A DNA stretch of 63,510 nt, filler included, from Octopus bimaculoides (taxonomy: Eukaryota), in NCBI RefSeq assembly GCF_001194135.2. It is 7 parts of 7 records of this genome, joined end to end, with 100 filler letters (N's around TTAATTAATTAA, not from the genome) between each part and the next. Parts side by side here need not be neighbours in the genome. Positions count along the whole stretch, not along the records: positions 6,712 to 24,655 come from NC_068988.1; 6 more parts are not named here. One strand, written 5' to 3'. The notes beneath the pieces were generated by a model that had not been told where the DNA came from, searched no databases, and was given only the letters and a program-made list of their open reading frames with translations. Below, piece after piece: positions 14,651-24,655 of this stretch. The translations under genes and the position numbers were made by a program. Position 1 is the stretch's first letter. The number at the start of each line of letters is the position of its first letter.

Positions 14651-15107
14651 TTACTATATTTCTGCTGAAATACACTGCCTTCGTTTCAGTTAATTTTGAA
14701 AATAATGAAGAATTTATTAAAAATAACTTTCGCAGTTATTAAGTTAGTGTTTAGAAAATAAGTTAACATGAAATTTCAATGGAAGGATTTAACTGAGATC
14801 CACTTTACAAGAGAAAGTTCTTATCAAGGTAACAGAGGCAGGCTGATATCAAAAGGGTTAGAGGGAACAATCCCAGGTGATATGGTGGTATCAATTCTTA
14901 CTGGGTCAACTAGTAACTTGGTGAACTGAGGTAATGTTGAATAATGTGTCCTCCACCACAGAAGCATACACACACACACACACAAAGGAACAACAACCAC
15001 AAATTTGATCAGAATGACCCCAGGGCCAACTCCCCAGTGCATGATGATAAATGTAGACATATACACATGTCTCTCTTGTGGAATCTATGGAAACTAATGA
15101 CACTTAC

Positions 15108-15202
15108 CATAACATAAACATAAGCATATATAGATGCCCCATGGTGAAAGAAATAGAACACTTCTCCTATAGTTTTATAATGAACAGTCATGATTATAAG
15201 AT
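15108..15202 (-). CDS. TLCD4: TLCD4 exon (D-LIIMTVHYKTIGEVFYFFHHGASIYAYVYVM)
   Basis: Acceptor ttatttttattttcag, donor ATG|GTAAGT, 95 nt with phases 1 and 0. Contains the conserved TLC HH motif. Confidence 0.95.
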
Positions 15203-16318
15203 CTGAAAATAAAAATAAGGAAAAAACAACTCAGTAAACAATCCATGAGAAGGGAAAATAGATATAAATGAAGATTTTTAAATACAGGGGGAAAAAATAT
15301 CCCTTTAAGGACCAAAATACTCAATTTATAACAACTGGTCCTTTAGGAGCCCATGAGGGAGTTTTGCAGAGTTAATCAACCTGTTAGAAATAACAGTCAA
15401 ATCATCCTCAAATCAAACCCAATAATTTTCTAAAACAAAGGACAAAGATGCACAAACCATCATCATTGTTTTATGTCTGGTTTCCATGCTGGCATGGGTT
15501 AGATGGGTCGTTATGGTACAAGTGAGGTCCCTCTTATAATTATTGCCCTCCTGAATAGATCAGGGGATTACAATCCACTATGATCTGGTTTCTGTTGTTG
15601 GATGTTCTGACACCAACTACTTTACACTGTGTCCAAGGAAAACTTGGAGAGTGTAAACAACTTGGTAAAGTACTGGACAATGATACTCCAGTATGGCCAT
15701 GATCAATAAAATAGTAAGAATCAGATAGGAGATTAATGGTTGAGATTTGTGTTGTGTCTGCAGTCAACACATTACACTCTCAATCATATAGCATAGTCAT
15801 TTTAGCTGTAAGTAGGGACCAATGTAAGATAGCACTGTAAAAAATGTACTGCATTTTGTTGGCTTGCTGTACTGAATTCACTCCCACCCACAGAGAAAAG
15901 ACATTTGTGATAAACTAGCACAATTGCCCATTCATTTCATTGGTTTTTCAATGCTAACAAGGGTTGCTGAGAATGTTTTGGAAAGTATATGAGGCAGACT
16001 TATTTTGCAGTCAGGTGTTCTTCTTATCACTAACTCTTACTTATTTCCAAGGAAGGGAGTTTTTAATTTCACAGGTCTTTGAAAACACAAAGTAACCGGT
16101 CATAAAATCAACAAGAAATATAAATATAATTCACCATTTTTCTCAAGCATAACTATAGGATGCACACACACATGCACACATATGTGAATAGTTTCTTACA
16201 GTTTCCCTTTACAAATTTACTTACAAGGCATTGGTTGGTCCAAGGCAATAAAAGACACTTGCCCTAAGTGCTGCAGAGTGGGACTCAGCTTGAAACTATA
16301 CAGTTTAGAAATGAACTA

Positions 16319-18439: not shown

Positions 18440-19140
18440 ATGAATAAACTGTTGTCTACATTATGCAAAAATGAAAATAACGCTGACATCTCATTTTAAC
18501 AGATATATTTACCAAAATTACATAAAAATATCTCAAAATACTAAAGAGTATATTTATTCAATAAAATCGCCATTGGCTTCAATCACGGCCTCCAGACGAC
18601 TTCGGAATCTCCTGCAACTCTTCTGGACGATCTCCTTGTTTAAGTTGGTGAATACTGCCATAATCCTTGCCTTCGGTTCATCTTTGGTGTTACAAGGAGT
18701 TTTGTTGGTCTCTTGCTCAACTGTGCCCCCCCCCCACACACACATAATAATAATCAAGGGGGTTGCAGTCTTGGGAGTTAGGTGGCCACATCACCCCAGT
18801 CTGGGGTGATGTGGTCACAGAAATTGTCTGACAGCCATGACTGGGTTCTCCTGCTTGTGTGGCATGTTGAATAGTCCTGTTGCCAGACACAGGGTCTTCT
18901 AGCAGCCACCCTCTTGGCCCAGGACAGCACTGATGTAGGCCTCCGTGTTGAGTATGAGGCCATGTGGGGAAGATGAATGGGGACATAACGTCGCCATCCC
19001 TAGTGATCACTCTAAACACCATGAGGTTGACTGGATGTTTGATTTCTATCACTCTCGGTACATGTCCTCATATTGCACTGTCCTCAGGTTGACACCCAAA
19101 CACTCTGAAGTGTTTGTATTGGAGCTTCCAGCGTGAATAC
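18440..19140 (-). mobile_element. Tc1/mariner (maT/DD37D-like) transposase remnant, frameshifted
   Basis: KHPVNLMVFRVITRDGDVMSPFIFP, RVAARRPCVWQQDYSTCHTSRRTQSWLSDNF and WPPNSQDCNPLDYY...EANGDFIE fall across different frames. Confidence 0.85.
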
Positions 19141-19259: not shown

Positions 19260-21180
19260 GGAAGAAACCTGATTTTTTATTGTCCCTTATTCAATTGACT
19301 CTAAGAAGGATACAAAGGCAACTTTGACAGGATTTAAACCCAGATTATAAAGGGATTTTATTATTCACCATAAAAACATTTTGTCTAACACATTATATTT
19401 CTACATGTCCAATAATAATTTATTCTAAGTTAAGCATAAGGTCAGAAATAAGAGGAAGCAGTAAATTAAATCAACTCCAGATGTTAAGAAGTGAAGTAAA
19501 TCTTCTTGGGATGTAAACTTAGAATGTAAAAACAGATAACTAAATACAAGGCATTTCGTCTGACCCTTTAATCCATCAACCTCCGATAAGAATTATTTCT
19601 CTCAAAGGTTTGAGATCAGAATTTAAAGGAAGAAGCATAATCAGTGAAATCAGTTCCAGTCTTCATTGGTACTTTTATATTGGTCTCAAATTTTGGCACA
19701 AAGCCAGCAAGTTCAGGGTATTGGAATAAATCATTTACATCAACCCCAGTGTTCAACTGGTATTATTTTATTGACCCCTGAAAGGATGAAAGGCAAAGTC
19801 AACCGCAGAGGCATTTGAATTCAGAATGGGAAGTTGGACGAAATACCACTAAGTATTTTGCCCCACATTCTAATAATTCTGCAAGCTCACTGCTTTTCAT
19901 TGGTCCTTTTATATTAACCCCAGTAATTGACTGGTACTTTATTCCATTGGCTCTCAAATGAGGAAAGACAAAGTTGACCTCAGTGCGAACTCAGAACATA
20001 AAAGGTTGTGATTAAATACGGAAAGGCATTTTGCCTAATACTTTAAAGACTGTACCAATTCACTACCCTATTAATCTTTCTACACCAGGCATAATGCCTA
20101 AAATGTTTAGAAGAGGGGGCTAGTTGATTACATCAACCCTAGTGCACAACTGTTACTTATTTCATGGACCCTGAAAGTATGAAAGGACGTTAAACGATGA
20201 TGATGATGATCATGATGATGAATATAAAGATGGACGAAATGCTGCGAAGCATTTTCCCCAGTATACTAACAGTTCTGCTAACATGCTGCCTTCCACTACC
20301 TTATTTATAATAATGATAATAGTTTCTAGCACAGGTGCAAAGTTTGAAATTTTGGAGAACGGGTTAATCAATACCATCAATCCCAGATTTGAACAGGTGT
20401 GTTATTTTATCCAAAAGGATCAAAAGAATCAAAGGCAAACTTAACTTTGGTGGAACTTAAACTCTGCTTAGAGAATAAAAGACTGGAACAAATAATGCAA
20501 AGCATTTCGCATGAAATTCTAATGATTCTACTAATTCTGCCATCCTAATAATAATAATTGTTTTGAATAAGGCTAGCAATTTGTATAGAGGGGTCAGTTG
20601 ATTAGAATACAGTACTTATAGCCACTTCATCGGATGAAGAGCGCGGAGAGGGAAACGAGGCACTTGGCTTGAGAAGATCTCGAAGCGTAAGGCGCCCGCC
20701 TGGTTGGATGGCGGACTTCGAAGTGGAGTAGGGGCGGACGTGATCTTTAAGATCAGGGTGGCGTGTGGTATGACGTCAGCGACTGGGGAGCTGACCGGAA
20801 GAGGAAGAAGGGCAGAGGGAGCTTCGATTGGGATTTCATGCCCTTTTCGAACGGGGTCGTTGTGAGGATAGGATGTGCCAAGCGATCGTCTAGGTGTTGG
20901 GAGAAGCAGCTGCTATTTCTAGTGTTCTTCGGGTCGGGCCAGCCGTGAAGATCGGATACCGCAGGACAGACTTGTGCAAAGGAAGGAAACCGAGGTAAGC
21001 TGATTACTTCTACTCGCACGCATACACCACAGAATGGTAATTTGTTTTATCAACCTTGGATGGATGAAAGGTAAAGTTAACCTTGATGAGATTTGAACTC
21101 AGAATGTACAAAGCCGTAGCTAAATACACCAAGGCATTTTTTTCTGATGCTTTAATGATTCTGCCAATCCACTGTCTCAC
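19260..21180 (-). repeat. Head-to-tail train of about 8 decayed copies of one SINE family
   Basis: Repeated ttttattgaccc...ggatgaaaggcaaagt..acc...atttgaactcagaa units, all in the same orientation. Confidence 0.7.
20621..21020. other. GC/CpG-rich island of unknown origin
   Basis: 204 of 360 nt are G or C over 20641-21000 (hand count, 57%) within AT-rich flanks. Contains GGGGCGG, TGACGTCA, ACCGGAAG and a GAG|GTAAGC donor-like site. Confidence 0.85.
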
Positions 21181-22860
21181 CTAATAATAATTTCTTACTT
21201 TAGTAGAAGGTTACAAATTTTTTTGAATAATGGTTAGGTACAGCCATGACTAGATGCATGCATAGCTAGGAGTGGGCATGGTCATGTGGTTGAGAAGTTT
21301 GCTTCCCAACCACATGGTTCCTGGTTCAGTCCCACTGCATAGCACCTTAGGTAAGTATCTTCTACTGTAGTATCAAGTTGAGGAAAGCTTTGTGCATGGG
21401 TTTGGTAAATGGAAACTGAAGAAGCACATCATTTGTGTGTCTGTGTTTCCCTCACGTTTGCTGGTTTAAAAACTGTGGTTTCCTTCCAGTGTTGCTGGCT
21501 CACAGTCCACTGAGAAAGGATATCCAAAATTCTTGACATACATTAACATAAGTTGATTGATTTTTGTAAATAAACAGTTCCTTAAATGGTGCTATTTTGT
21601 TTCCAGTTTATAATCCCAAAACGTCAGGACTGTTTGTTGTTCAATAGACAGGGAGATTATTGCCTCATTTGAAAACAAGTTGGAGTTAGCAACAGGAAGG
21701 GCATAGAGCCATAGGAAAAAAAACTGTCTCAACATACTCTCATCTGACCCATGCAAGCATTGAAAAGTAGACGTTAAAAGGATGGTGATAATGAAAGTGA
21801 TTATGTTAAATATAGTGTAGGCAAGTGTATATGCTGTAGTTTCTAACGGGTATTTTATTTTATCAAAATTGAAGAGAAAGGAAGCAAATTTGGGCTTGGT
21901 TGAATTTCTAACTCGGAAACTAGACACTCGAAAGATATTTAGTAGATTATTCTACTGTCCCACTCCTTTACATTAATAAAAATTTTAGTGTGAACTTTTA
22001 AGCTGTTCAGATAAAAGGTTTCTTTTCTCCCCACCCAGCTCTGATTTCATTCAAACAAGCAGTAATGAAATATAATGCAAATGAAAGGTATCTTAAAAGC
22101 TTGTTTTTGTTGTAGCAAATGGGAGTTTAAATAAGTGTATGCATTTGTGCATGATTGTGTGTTTGTGTGAGTGTGTGCAATTACATGGATACAGGCACAT
22201 TTTTGCAGTCATGAAGTCTGGGATTCCATCCCACAGTATGGCATCTTCAACAAGGATATTTCACTATTGCCTTGTAACTGAAATTAGGTAGATGGAAACT
22301 GTAAGGAAGCTCATTGGGTAAACTATGTCTATAATTAAAAGGGCCACACATTCTGTCACACTGATTCTACCTGGGAATTACATTAACCTTTTTGTTGCCA
22401 TATTTCTGTTGAAATCAAGTTTGAAAATGATGAAGAATAACTTTGTCAATTCTAAACTAGTCTTTGGAACATAAACTAATAAAAAACTTTTCGTGGAAGG
22501 TTTTCAGTTAGATTGCTTGACCCATTAGCATTTAAACCAGCTGTATCCAGCCTAAATAGTTTACATGTTTCATGTCCAAACTGACCAGATCTAGCCTTTT
22601 ACATCTATCCTATAATGTCATCCTAAAAATTAACAATCACATCATTGAAATTTCTAAGTTACAAGATCATGCATGATTAATTCAAAACAATGTGAAGAAA
22701 CAAGCATTGCATTTGACAGAGTAATTTGAATGCTAAAAAGTTATACCTTTTCATTACAATATTTCTAATTAAATACATTGCTTTCATGTCAATTAATTTT
22801 AAAAATAACAAAGAATTCAGTAAAATAACTGTCGTTTTTTAAACTGGTATTTAGAACATC

Positions 22861-23253
22861 GTTGTTGTTGTTGTTGGCACTCCGTCGCTTACGACGTCGA
22901 GGGTTCCAGTTGATCTGATCAACAGAACAGCCTGCTCGTGAAATTAACGTGCAAGTGGCTGAGCACTCCACAGACACGTGTACCCTTAACGTAGTTCTCG
23001 GGGAGATTCAGCGTGACACAGTGTGACAAGGCTGACCCTTTGAATTACAGGCACAACAGAAACAGGAAGTAAGAGTGAGAGAAAGTTGTGGTGGAAGAGT
23101 ATAGCAGGGTTTGCCACCATCACCTGCCGGAGCCTCGTGGAGCTTTAGGTGTTTTTGTTCAATAAACACTCACAACGCCCAGTCTGGGAATCGAAACCGC
23201 GATCCTATAACCGCGAGTCCGCTGCCCTAACCACTGGGCCATTGCGCCTCCAC
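22861..23253 (-). mobile_element. Young full-length tRNA-derived SINE with 12-bp TSD, nested in an older repeat
   Basis: ATTTAGAACATC at 22849-22860 and 23254-23265. Box A TGGCCCAGTGG, box B GGTTTCGATTCCC, (AAC)n tail and many intact CpGs. Confidence 0.9.
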
Positions 23254-23894
23254 ATTTAGAACATCACTTAGCATGAAATCAAATCACTTAAACTTTTCCG
23301 TTACCATATTTCTAATTAAAACCACTGCCTTCATTGCAAGTAATTTTTAAAATAATGAAGAATTTAGTAAAATAACAGATACTATTAAGTTGGTATTTGG
23401 AAAATGAATTAACATAAAATTTTGATATAACTTTGTAGCATTTCTTGCATTCTGAGTTCAAATATGGCTGTGGTTAACTTTGCTTTTCATCCTTTTCAGG
23501 CCAACAAAATAAGTGCCTGTTGAGCATTGGGGTTAATGTAATCGACTAACTGTCCCCTAAATTACAGTGCCAAAACCTGAAACAATCTTATTATTAGCAC
23601 TTATTACATAAAAATACTGAATCAGCGGATTGCATTGTTTCACCATATTGTTTGTAATAATATCTTTTAATTCCCATTCTGGGCCATAGTACACTTTTTT
23701 TTCTTTTTAATTGTAGTAAGGGCATCATGAGGTTATTACATTAAAATTTCAGTGTTCGCTTTCTTTCTCAATGATTCTTCATCTTCAATAAATTTAAAAT
23801 TCTGTTTGGTTCATCACATATAAATCCACATTTATGTGTGCATATATATTCATGCGTGGCTGTATGTGCAAGTGTGAGTGCCTGTGTATACGTG

Positions 23895-23936
<42 letters not shown>

Positions 23937-23944
23937 ATACATAC

Positions 23945-24003
23945 CAGCAACCATGTAGCCAACCACAATGGCACAACTAGTCCTCACCACTGGAGCATCC
24001 CAC
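23945..24003 (-). CDS. TLCD4: TLCD4 exon (WDAPVVRTSCAIVVGYMVA-D)
   Basis: Acceptor ccttctcttttctctctcag, donor G|GTATGT, 59 nt with phases 2 and 1 that fit the next exon. Upstream exons were not found before the scaffold end. Confidence 0.92.
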
Positions 24004-24344
24004 CTGAGAGAGAAAAGAGAAGGATGTTACAGTTAGGGTGGTAATGATGATGATGAAGATGTTGAAGAGGATAATGATAGCGGTGGTGGTGTTGGTTTGG
24101 GAGCAGGCAATAGTAGGGCTTTCAGTGGTGGTGATGACAATGATATTTCTATACAAATGAGCCACAATGGCTATGAGGTTCAGAAGCTGGCCTATTGAAC
24201 AGATGATCATAAATTCAGCTCTTACTACAGCAATTGTGTTGTGTTGTGTCTACATGTGCTCCAATTCTGACAAAAAGGGAAAGAAGAAAAAGGGCTCCAC
24301 CTAATATTTTTTTTAATAGTTCAATAGTTAGTGCTAAGAAGGGA

Positions 24345-24655
24345 GATCAACCTTCAGTTATAGGAAGTGGGTGGATCAAGTGTAGTTTACTGATAGGAAG
24401 TGGGTGGATCAATTGCAGTTCACTGGTAGGAAGGAATGGAGATCAACCATAGTTCACAGGTAGGAATGGAGATCAACTGTAGTTTAGTGGCAGGAAGGAG
24501 GATCAGCTGTAGTTTAGTGGCAGGAAGGAGGATCAACTGTAGTTTAGTGGCAGGAAGGAGGATCAACTGTAGTTTAGTGGCAGGAAGGAGGATCAGCTGT
24601 AGTTTAGTGGCAGGAAGGAGGATCAACTGTAGTTTAGTGGCAGGAAGGAGGATCA
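24345..24655. repeat. 30-bp minisatellite GATCA(A/G)CTGTAGTTTAGTGGCAGGAAGGAG
   Basis: GATC at 24345, 24374, 24407, 24441, then every 30 nt from 24471 to 24651. Confidence 0.95.

What the first reader, a model, noticed from the sequence alone, without database searches (positions are those of the whole stretch)
20621..21020. Unexplained 57% GC, CpG-rich island splitting a SINE inside a TLCD4 intron
Seen in the sequence: an abrupt 400-bp composition shift with no gap. The flanks look like the two halves of one SINE (...gattagaatacagtactt | aatggtaatttgttttatcaacc...). On + it has GC-box (20731), CRE (20771) and ETS (20794) motifs and a GAG|GTAAGC donor (20995), like an antisense promoter with a first exon. 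It also has several short palindromes (CTTCATC-G-GATGAAG at 20625, TGATCT-TTA-AGATCA at 20741). One codon register is open on both strands for over 70 codons, as in GC-rich foreign coding DNA. Alternatives are a horizontally acquired or contaminant fragment, an LTR or LINE 5' UTR, or a captured promoter. I could not identify it.
Basis: partly seen in the sequence, partly recalled or inferred. Interest (0 to 1): 0.7.

Follow-up and report, generated by a model that had tools for sequence, protein, structure and literature searches.

The report
Promoter-like CpG island inserted in intron
A 400-base, non-coding, CpG-rich stretch with promoter-type motifs sits as an insertion inside an old repeat in an intron of a TLC-domain gene; it is probably an unmethylated intragenic promoter or a very young mobile fragment, but I could not tell which because the host genome was out of reach.

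Summary
Bases 20621-21020 are 55.8% GC with 30 CpGs (observed/expected 1.07). The rest of the piece is 36% GC with CpG o/e 0.24. The island shows no deamination footprint (TpG 0.91, CpA 0.78) and has twice as much G as C on the + strand. It interrupts one unit of a decayed array of roughly 200-bp SINE-like units. It lies in the 8.7-kb intron between two minus-strand TLC-domain exons.

It is not coding: the open frames are as long as chance predicts and Pfam finds nothing. It is not a known or stably folded RNA. It matched nothing in the plasmid, phage or E. coli collections (BLAST), and one exact 23-mer found nothing in the prokaryotic, viral or metagenome scans. It lacks the marks of an LTR, a retroposon or a DNA transposon.

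It carries YY1-like, GC-box, CRE, ETS and CCAAT motifs within 125 bp, and one donor-like site on the + strand.

Best reading (0.4): a germline-unmethylated, promoter-type island brought in by insertion, more likely firing antisense to the TLC gene. Main rival (0.3): a very young unclassified repeat fragment. Copy number, methylation and transcription could not be tested, because the host genome is not in any reachable collection.

The parts
20621..20993 (+). GC-rich, CpG-rich core of the island (56.3% GC, 28 CpGs, o/e 1.07; G 0.38 against C 0.19 on the + strand)
20705..20831 (+). Cluster of promoter-type motifs: YY1-like ATGGCGG 20708, GC box 20731, CRE 20771, ETS core 20795, polypurine run 20797-20822, inverted CCAAT (ATTGG) 20827
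   Evidence: only the CRE is individually rare (0.5% of shuffles). All four main motifs occur together in 0 of 20000 shuffles, but the motifs were chosen after looking.
20625..20639 (.). Perfect 15-nt palindrome CTTCATC-G-GATGAAG at the left edge of the island
20741..20755 (.). Perfect 15-nt palindrome TGATCTT-T-AAGATCA between the GC box and the CRE
20992..21000 (+). Donor-like site GAG|GTAAGC (GT at 20995). It is the only site on either strand with at least 7 of 9 matches to the donor consensus inside the island.
   Evidence: weak on its own (11% of shuffles). It overlaps the 13-mer GGTAAGCTGATTA, which repeats GGTCAGTTGATTA of the left flank (family D8).
20994..21032 (.). Ambiguous right edge (about 40% GC). 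It could be the end of the insert or a diverged piece of the repeat unit.
   Evidence: similarity to the units not significant, p 0.14-0.9
20550..20620 (+). Left (5') part of the interrupted SINE-like unit
   Evidence: (p 0.01 and 0.008 against two sister units)
21033..21200 (+). Right (3') part of the interrupted SINE-like unit
   Evidence: 0 of 500 shuffles against each of the six units
19420..21260 (+). Head-to-tail array of at least seven diverged SINE-like units of roughly 200 bp (about 70-80% alike, CpG o/e 0.32), which holds the island
   Evidence: too diverged for Tandem Repeats Finder
23940..23987 (-). TLC-domain exon upstream of the intron (bounds are those of the tblastn match)
15108..15215 (-). 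TLC-domain exon downstream of the intron (bounds are those of the tblastn match)
9031..9327 (-). Last coding exon of the TLC-domain gene (Pfam PF03798, E 3e-11); a further exon lies at 11375-11479

Best explanation
A non-coding, promoter-type CpG island of about 400 bp entered, or replaced part of, one unit of an old SINE-like repeat array. The array lies in an 8.7-kb intron of a minus-strand TLC-domain gene whose body has been methylated in the germ line for a long time.

I infer that the island stays free of germ-line methylation. That would explain why it has lost no CpGs while everything around it has lost about three quarters of them.

I also infer that it acts as an intragenic Pol II promoter or regulatory island bound by CRE/ATF, ETS, Sp1, YY1 and NF-Y type factors. 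The more likely direction is the + strand, antisense to the TLC gene, with a short non-coding first exon ending at the GT at 20995.

Shown: the composition, the lack of any deamination footprint, the motifs, the interruption of the repeat unit and the intron context. Inferred: hypomethylation, transcription, direction, and a source that is either a mobile element carrying its own promoter or an ectopic copy of a host promoter.
For: The island has CpG o/e 1.07, TpG 0.91 and CpA 0.78. All older sequence in the same intron has CpG 0.13-0.33 and TpG/CpA 1.15-1.6. Even a young 393-bp insertion with a perfect 12-bp target duplication already shows CpG 0.82 and TpG/CpA 1.27.

A young canonical transposon insertion should still have clean ends, and none is seen. 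There are no inverted terminal repeats. There is no simple-repeat or A-rich tail. There are no TG..CA ends, no poly(A) signal and no TATA. Exact flanking repeats do not exceed chance.

A perfect CRE occurs in only 0.5% of shuffles. YY1-like, GC-box, ETS and CCAAT motifs lie with it inside 125 bp.

G exceeds C two-fold on the + strand across the island, and the only donor-like site is on the + strand.

In Octopus bimaculoides, a group of gene-body-methylated genes lacks methylation at the TSS and promoter (PMC9476566). In mammals, orphan and intragenic CpG islands often act as promoters (PMC2944787, PMC8873577).
Against: There are no methylation, transcript or chromatin data.

Copy number in the host is unknown. 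A control query from the window's own young SINE-like element also found nothing in the protein collection, so the empty search for the island ORF carries no weight.

The motif set was chosen after looking. Apart from the CRE, each motif is expected in 5-15% of shuffles (CCAAT in 49%), and the donor in 11%.

The G skew is uniform across the island and does not flip at a central start site. That fits a transcribed segment or a strand-biased repeat as well as it fits a promoter.

The same octopus study reports that transposons are virtually unmethylated. A fresh transposon copy would therefore arrive rich in CpG. The host was also not shown to be a cephalopod.
Confidence: 0.4

Rival explanations
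1. A very recent insertion of a fragment of an unclassified host repeat, such as a strand-biased GC-rich piece of a retroelement. It would have no function here, and it would be rich in CpG only because methylation-driven decay has not had time to act.
For: It interrupts a repeat unit, as an insertion does. The same array and intron have collected other insertions: an older SINE-like element at about 21262 and a young one at 22861-23253. The young element shows that new insertions in this intron are GC- and CpG-rich and about 400 bp long. The uniform G skew suits a piece of a transcribed element. Perfect 5-bp flanking repeats exist (ATACA, AGAAT).
Against: No hallmark of any transposon class was found: no terminal inverted repeats, no TG..CA ends, no poly(A) signal, no tail, no Pfam match in any frame and no tRNA- or other RNA-derived head. 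The 5-bp repeats are at chance level: the search listed about a dozen exact flanking repeats of 5 bp or more, the longest (7 bp) at a position that conflicts with the unit alignment. The only long flanking repeat is imperfect (11 of 13), which would mean age and not youth. There is no second copy in the 18-kb piece, though that is hardly informative.
Confidence: 0.3
2. An ectopic, DNA-level copy of a host gene's promoter and 5' exon, patched into a chromosome break inside the repeat array as a templated insertion. It could be young and need not be active.
For: The composition and motifs are those of a housekeeping-type promoter. No transposon ends or target duplication are seen. The junction edges are untidy: about 15 and 39 bases fit neither the island nor the repeat unit clearly.
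Against: Such events are rare compared with transposon insertions (background knowledge). No parent locus could be looked for. The uniform skew argues against a segment that spans a start site.
Confidence: 0.1
3. An assembly artefact: a fragment misplaced between two similar repeat units by assembly or gap filling, or a contaminant read-through.
For: The scaffold has an N gap inside a microsatellite at 10341-11015, so it is a gapped draft. The island lies between similar repeat units that share GGTCAGTTGATTA / GGTAAGCTGATTA. That is the kind of place where assembly graphs mis-join.
Against: There is no gap or N at either junction. BLAST found no match to plasmids, phages or E. coli genomes. 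One exact 23-mer is absent from the GTDB genomes, IMG/VR and JGI metagenomes. The lack of any reading frame beyond chance argues against prokaryotic DNA.
Confidence: 0.08
4. Foreign or horizontally acquired protein-coding DNA, or a gene or retro-pseudogene for a structured non-coding RNA.
For: Open frames of 97, 88 and 75 codons and two perfect palindromes.
Against: The frame lengths equal the shuffle expectation. Pfam finds nothing in any frame. The 5.8-billion protein collection gave no hit for the 88-aa ORF, the one frame searched. Rfam gives no match even at E up to 10. The folding energy is no better than shuffles on either strand (z +0.90 and -0.63).
Confidence: 0.03

Closest known systems
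Orphan and intragenic CpG islands of vertebrates (PMC2944787; PMC8873577)
   Same: A short CpG o/e ~1 island within a CpG-depleted, methylated gene body, away from any known 5' end, carrying common promoter motifs. Such islands often start alternative or antisense transcripts.
   Different: The host here is an invertebrate-type genome with mosaic, gene-body methylation. The island is only about 400 bp. It clearly arrived by insertion into a repeat. There are no methylation or transcription data.
Unmethylated TSS and promoter of gene-body-methylated genes in Octopus bimaculoides (pattern 'MP2', PMC9476566)
   Same: A methylated gene body with a sharp methylation-free promoter. This gives a known way to keep CpGs next to depleted sequence.
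   Different: Those are 5' ends of annotated genes, whereas this island lies mid-gene. The host of this window was not identified with the tools; that its repeats look cephalopod-like is only my recollection.
Transposon-borne promoters (solo LTRs; 5' UTR promoters of non-LTR elements)
   Same: A compact block of transcription-factor sites delivered by insertion, able to drive sense or antisense transcripts in introns.
   Different: LTR features were tested and not met: no TG..CA ends, no poly(A) signal, no convincing 4-6 bp duplication. A 5' UTR alone is not what 5'-truncating retrotransposition leaves behind.
The window's own young SINE-like insertion at 22861-23253
   Same: About 400 bp, GC-rich, CpG-rich, inserted into a repeat in the same intron.
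   Different: That element has a perfect 12-bp target duplication, a (GTT)n end, balanced G and C, and already a TpG/CpA excess of 1.27. The island has none of these.

Membership tests
CpG island (sequence definition) | At least 200 bp with GC of 50% or more and CpG o/e of 0.6 or more (classic criteria, from background knowledge) | tested here: met
   400 bp, GC 55.8%, o/e 1.07. The stricter 500-bp length criterion is not met.
Unmethylated Pol II promoter island | Lack of germ-line CpG methylation | not testable with these tools
   Only indirect evidence: no deamination footprint (TpG 0.91, CpA 0.78), against 1.15-1.6 in all neighbouring sequence.
Unmethylated Pol II promoter island | Transcription start sites and spliced transcripts | not testable with these tools
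There is only a donor-like site at 20995, which is weak.
Unmethylated Pol II promoter island | Cluster of general promoter factor sites | tested here: inconclusive
   CRE, ETS, GC-box, YY1-like and CCAAT motifs lie within 125 bp. The CRE is found in 0.5% of shuffles, three others in 5-15% each and CCAAT in 49%. The choice of motifs was post hoc.
Solo LTR | TG...CA termini | tested here: not met
   No TG/CA pair at boundaries compatible with the repeat-unit alignment.
Solo LTR | 4-6 bp target-site duplication | tested here: inconclusive
   Perfect 5-mers ATACA and AGAAT flank possible boundaries, but about a dozen exact repeats of 5 bp or more turn up in the search window, as chance predicts.
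Solo LTR | Poly(A) signal, usually with TATA, inside the LTR | tested here: not met
   No AATAAA, ATTAAA or TATA-like hexamer on either strand in 20600-21040.
Non-LTR retroposon, SINE or processed retrocopy | 3' A-rich or simple-repeat tail next to a 7-20 bp target duplication | tested here: not met
   No tail at either end. The only long flanking repeat is an imperfect 13-mer (11 of 13). The true young retroposon nearby shows what is expected.
Non-LTR retroposon, SINE or processed retrocopy | Small-RNA-derived head or reverse-transcriptase remnants | tested here: not met
   ARAGORN finds none; Rfam finds none at E up to 10; Pfam finds none in six frames.
DNA transposon or MITE | Terminal inverted repeats | tested here: not met
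   The best match is 10 of 14 at positions inside the island, with no leading run.
Any repeat family | Multiple copies in the host genome | not testable with these tools
   No second copy in the 18-kb piece. The host genome is absent from the collections, and the positive control failed.
Foreign coding DNA or contaminant | Reading frame beyond chance, or similarity to prokaryotic, plasmid or phage sequence | tested here: not met
   The three collection scans used one exact 23-mer, so they only exclude near-identical sources.
Structured non-coding RNA | Match to an RNA family, or folding better than shuffles | tested here: not met

The most novel reading that the evidence does not exclude
An invertebrate 'orphan' CpG island made by insertion. 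In this reading a mobile or ectopically copied promoter landed in a heavily methylated gene body, has since resisted germ-line methylation, and now drives an unannotated transcript antisense to a TLC-domain gene. That would be a datable example of how methylation-free promoter islands arise in a mosaic-methylated genome.
Probability: 0.3. Interest if true: 0.45.

Novelty: new member of a known kind. Interest (0 to 1): 0.3.

Why it matters
If the island is truly unmethylated and transcribed, it is a clear case of a promoter island delivered by insertion into a methylated invertebrate gene body. It would bear on how such genomes protect or create promoters, and on possible antisense control of a lipid-related TLC-domain gene. 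If it is merely a young repeat fragment, it is ordinary. It is then useful mainly as a marker of a recently active, still unclassified element, and as a caution that CpG-rich patches in such introns can simply be young insertions.

Tried and rejected
- **Coding DNA.** The open frames of 97, 88 and 75 codons equal the shuffle expectation. Pfam finds nothing in any frame. The 88-aa ORF has no homologue and the 61-aa ORF is not on record.
- **Known or structured RNA.** Rfam was run on the whole piece and then on the island alone at E up to 10. Both strands fold no better than shuffles. ARAGORN finds nothing.
- **Contaminant or foreign DNA.** BLASTN against plasmids, phages and E. coli genomes found nothing. 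Exact 23-mer scans of GTDB genomes, IMG/VR and JGI metagenomes found nothing.
- **Transposon ends.** The search for target-site duplications gave only chance-level 4-7-mers. The search for terminal inverted repeats gave nothing. No poly(A) signal or TATA was found.
- **Excess of short palindromes.** Palindromic 6-mers and 8-mers are at chance level. Only the two 15-nt palindromes stand out.
- **Reaching the host genome.** The host's own TLC exon is not in the protein collection; the best hit is 51% identical. A control ORF from the young SINE-like element found nothing. Copy number therefore could not be estimated, and the empty island search is uninformative.
- **Naming neighbouring blocks.** The GC-rich block at 18550-19060 and other ORFs gave nothing in Pfam or PDB searches.
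- **Tandem Repeats Finder.** It does not see the roughly 200-bp array because the units are too diverged.

Full report
**What is there**

Bases 20621-21020 are 55.8% GC with 30 CpGs (observed/expected 1.07). The remaining 16.9 kb of the piece is 36.0% GC with CpG o/e 0.24. The island windows rank first in the piece for both GC and CpG o/e. CpGs run from 20631 to 21019, and the nearest ones outside are at 20508 and 21115. No N lies near the island; the only gap is 10341-11015.

**Context**

A tblastn search with the nearest available TLC-domain protein (P0001, 51-71% identical per exon) places exons on the minus strand. They lie at about 23987-23940, 15215-15108, 11479-11375 and 9327-9031. The last exon matches Pfam PF03798 at E 3e-11. 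The island therefore lies in the 8.7-kb intron between the first two of these exons, and its + strand is antisense to the gene. I could confirm the TLC family but not 'TLCD4' specifically. I could not identify the host. Its own TLC exon is not in the protein collection.

**The flanks**

The stretch 19420-21260 is a head-to-tail array of at least seven units of roughly 200 bp, about 70-80% alike. ARAGORN and Rfam see no small-RNA head in them, so 'SINE' is only a working label.

- The left flank 20550-20620 matches the 5' part of two sister units (p 0.010 and 0.008).
- The right flank 21021-21200 matches the 3' part of all six sister units (0 of 500 shuffles each).
- The two matches are colinear.
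- A split-alignment search puts the break at 20604-20631 on the left and 21011-21035 on the right.

The exact ends cannot be fixed. About 15 bases on the left and 39 on the right fit neither the island nor the unit clearly.

**Is it a transposon?**

None of the class hallmarks is present.

- Exact flanking repeats reach only 4-7 bp. About a dozen of 5 bp or more turn up in the search window, the longest (7 bp) at a position that conflicts with the unit alignment, so they are at chance level.
- The only long flanking repeat, GGTCAGTTGATTA / GGTAAGCTGATTA, is imperfect (11 of 13).
- There are no terminal inverted repeats.
- There are no TG..CA ends compatible with the unit alignment.
- There is no AATAAA, ATTAAA or TATA on either strand.
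- There is no A-rich or simple-repeat tail.

The same intron holds a useful comparator, a 393-bp insertion at 22861-23253. It has a perfect 12-bp duplication (ATTTAGAACATC) and a (GTT)n end. Young retroposon insertions are therefore easy to recognise here.

**Is it coding, RNA or foreign?**

- The open stretches of 97, 88 and 75 codons equal what dinucleotide shuffles give; the longest frame in shuffles averages 96 codons.
- Pfam finds nothing in any frame.
- Rfam finds nothing, even when the island is searched alone at E up to 10.
- Neither strand folds better than shuffles (z +0.90 and -0.63).
- BLASTN finds nothing in plasmids, phages or E. coli genomes.
- One exact 23-mer is absent from the GTDB genomes, IMG/VR and JGI metagenomes.

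The foreign coding DNA reading and the structured RNA reading are both rejected.

**What the composition says**

Everything old in this intron bears the mark of germ-line methylation: CpG o/e 0.13-0.33 and TpG/CpA 1.15-1.6. The young insertion has CpG 0.82 and TpG/CpA 1.27. The island has CpG 1.07, TpG 0.91 and CpA 0.78, so it shows no deamination footprint at all.

Two readings follow. It may have arrived extremely recently from an unmethylated source. In that case a canonical transposon should still show clean ends, and it does not. Otherwise it is protected from methylation where it sits.

The + strand has G 0.36 against C 0.19. The skew is nearly uniform across the island, 0.19-0.46.

**Promoter-like content**

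Within 20705-20831 lie ATGGCGG (YY1-like), GGGGCGG, the perfect palindromic CRE TGACGTCA, CCGGAAG, a polypurine run and an inverted CCAAT.

- The CRE is rare by chance (0.5% of shuffles). The other main motifs are not (5-15%; CCAAT 49%).
- All four main motifs occur together in 0 of 20000 shuffles. The set was chosen after looking, so I treat it as suggestive only.
- Two perfect 15-nt palindromes at 20625 and 20741 are matched in number by 0.45% of shuffles.
- Short palindromes in general are at chance level.
- GAG|GTAAGC at 20995 is the only donor-like site on either strand. Such a site appears on the + strand in 11% of shuffles. It also overlaps the 13-mer that repeats the left flank.

**Reading**

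I commit, at 0.4, to a promoter-type CpG island brought in by insertion. I infer that it is kept free of germ-line methylation and acts as an intragenic Pol II promoter or regulatory island. The more likely direction is the + strand, antisense to the TLC gene.

This fits two known patterns. In Octopus bimaculoides, a group of gene-body-methylated genes lacks methylation at the TSS and promoter (PMC9476566). In mammals, orphan and intragenic CpG islands often act as promoters (PMC2944787 and PMC8873577).

The main rival, at 0.3, is a very young fragment of an unclassified repeat. The same octopus study reports transposons as virtually unmethylated, so fresh copies would arrive rich in CpG. Lesser rivals are an ectopic copy of a host promoter (0.1), an assembly artefact (0.08), and coding or RNA readings (0.03).

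**Limits**

The decisive facts are copy number, methylation, transcripts and spanning reads. All of them need the host genome and its data, and no collection here holds them. A control query from the window's own young SINE-like element found nothing. The empty search for the island ORF therefore says nothing about copy number.

**Verdict**

The anomaly is real and sharply bounded, and it is most likely a known kind of feature. Interest is modest unless methylation and transcript data show that the island is an insertion-born, active orphan promoter.

Noticed in passing
window 22861-23253 (minus strand), duplications at 22849-22860 and 23254-23265: A young SINE-like insertion of 393 bp with a perfect 12-bp target-site duplication (ATTTAGAACATC) and a (GTT)n end on the + strand. 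GC is 51% and CpG o/e 0.82. By eye it has tRNA-type box motifs, but ARAGORN and Rfam do not call it.
   Followed up: partly
window 22741-22859, 23288-23422 and 14642-14776: Three copies of an AT-rich repeat of about 120-135 bp (77-78% identity). Two of them flank the young insertion directly.
   Followed up: no
window 18550-19060 (minus strand): A GC-rich (49%) but CpG-poor (o/e 0.33) block with three overlapping short ORFs in different frames. By eye it looks like a decayed transposase tail, but Pfam and PDB sequence searches found nothing.
   Followed up: partly
window 12112-12900: Another GC-rich (48%), strongly CpG-depleted block (o/e 0.13, TpG 1.59) with several overlapping ORFs of 50-85 codons on both strands and no Pfam match. 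It is probably an old repeat.
   Followed up: partly
window about 21262-21480 (+ strand): An older SINE-like element interrupts the next unit of the same array of roughly 200-bp units. The array has taken several insertions.
   Followed up: no
window 10052-11272, N run 10341-11015: An assembly gap of 675 N inside a long TA/CA-type microsatellite. The many weak Rfam 'miRNA' hits at 6960-7060, 8440-8900, 10050-10340 and 11070-11330 are low-complexity artefacts, all far below their gathering scores.
   Followed up: partly
window 24335-24655: A tandemly repeated segment (78% self-identity at an offset of about 126 bp) that runs to the end of the piece. It gives repetitive open frames on both strands.
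   Followed up: no
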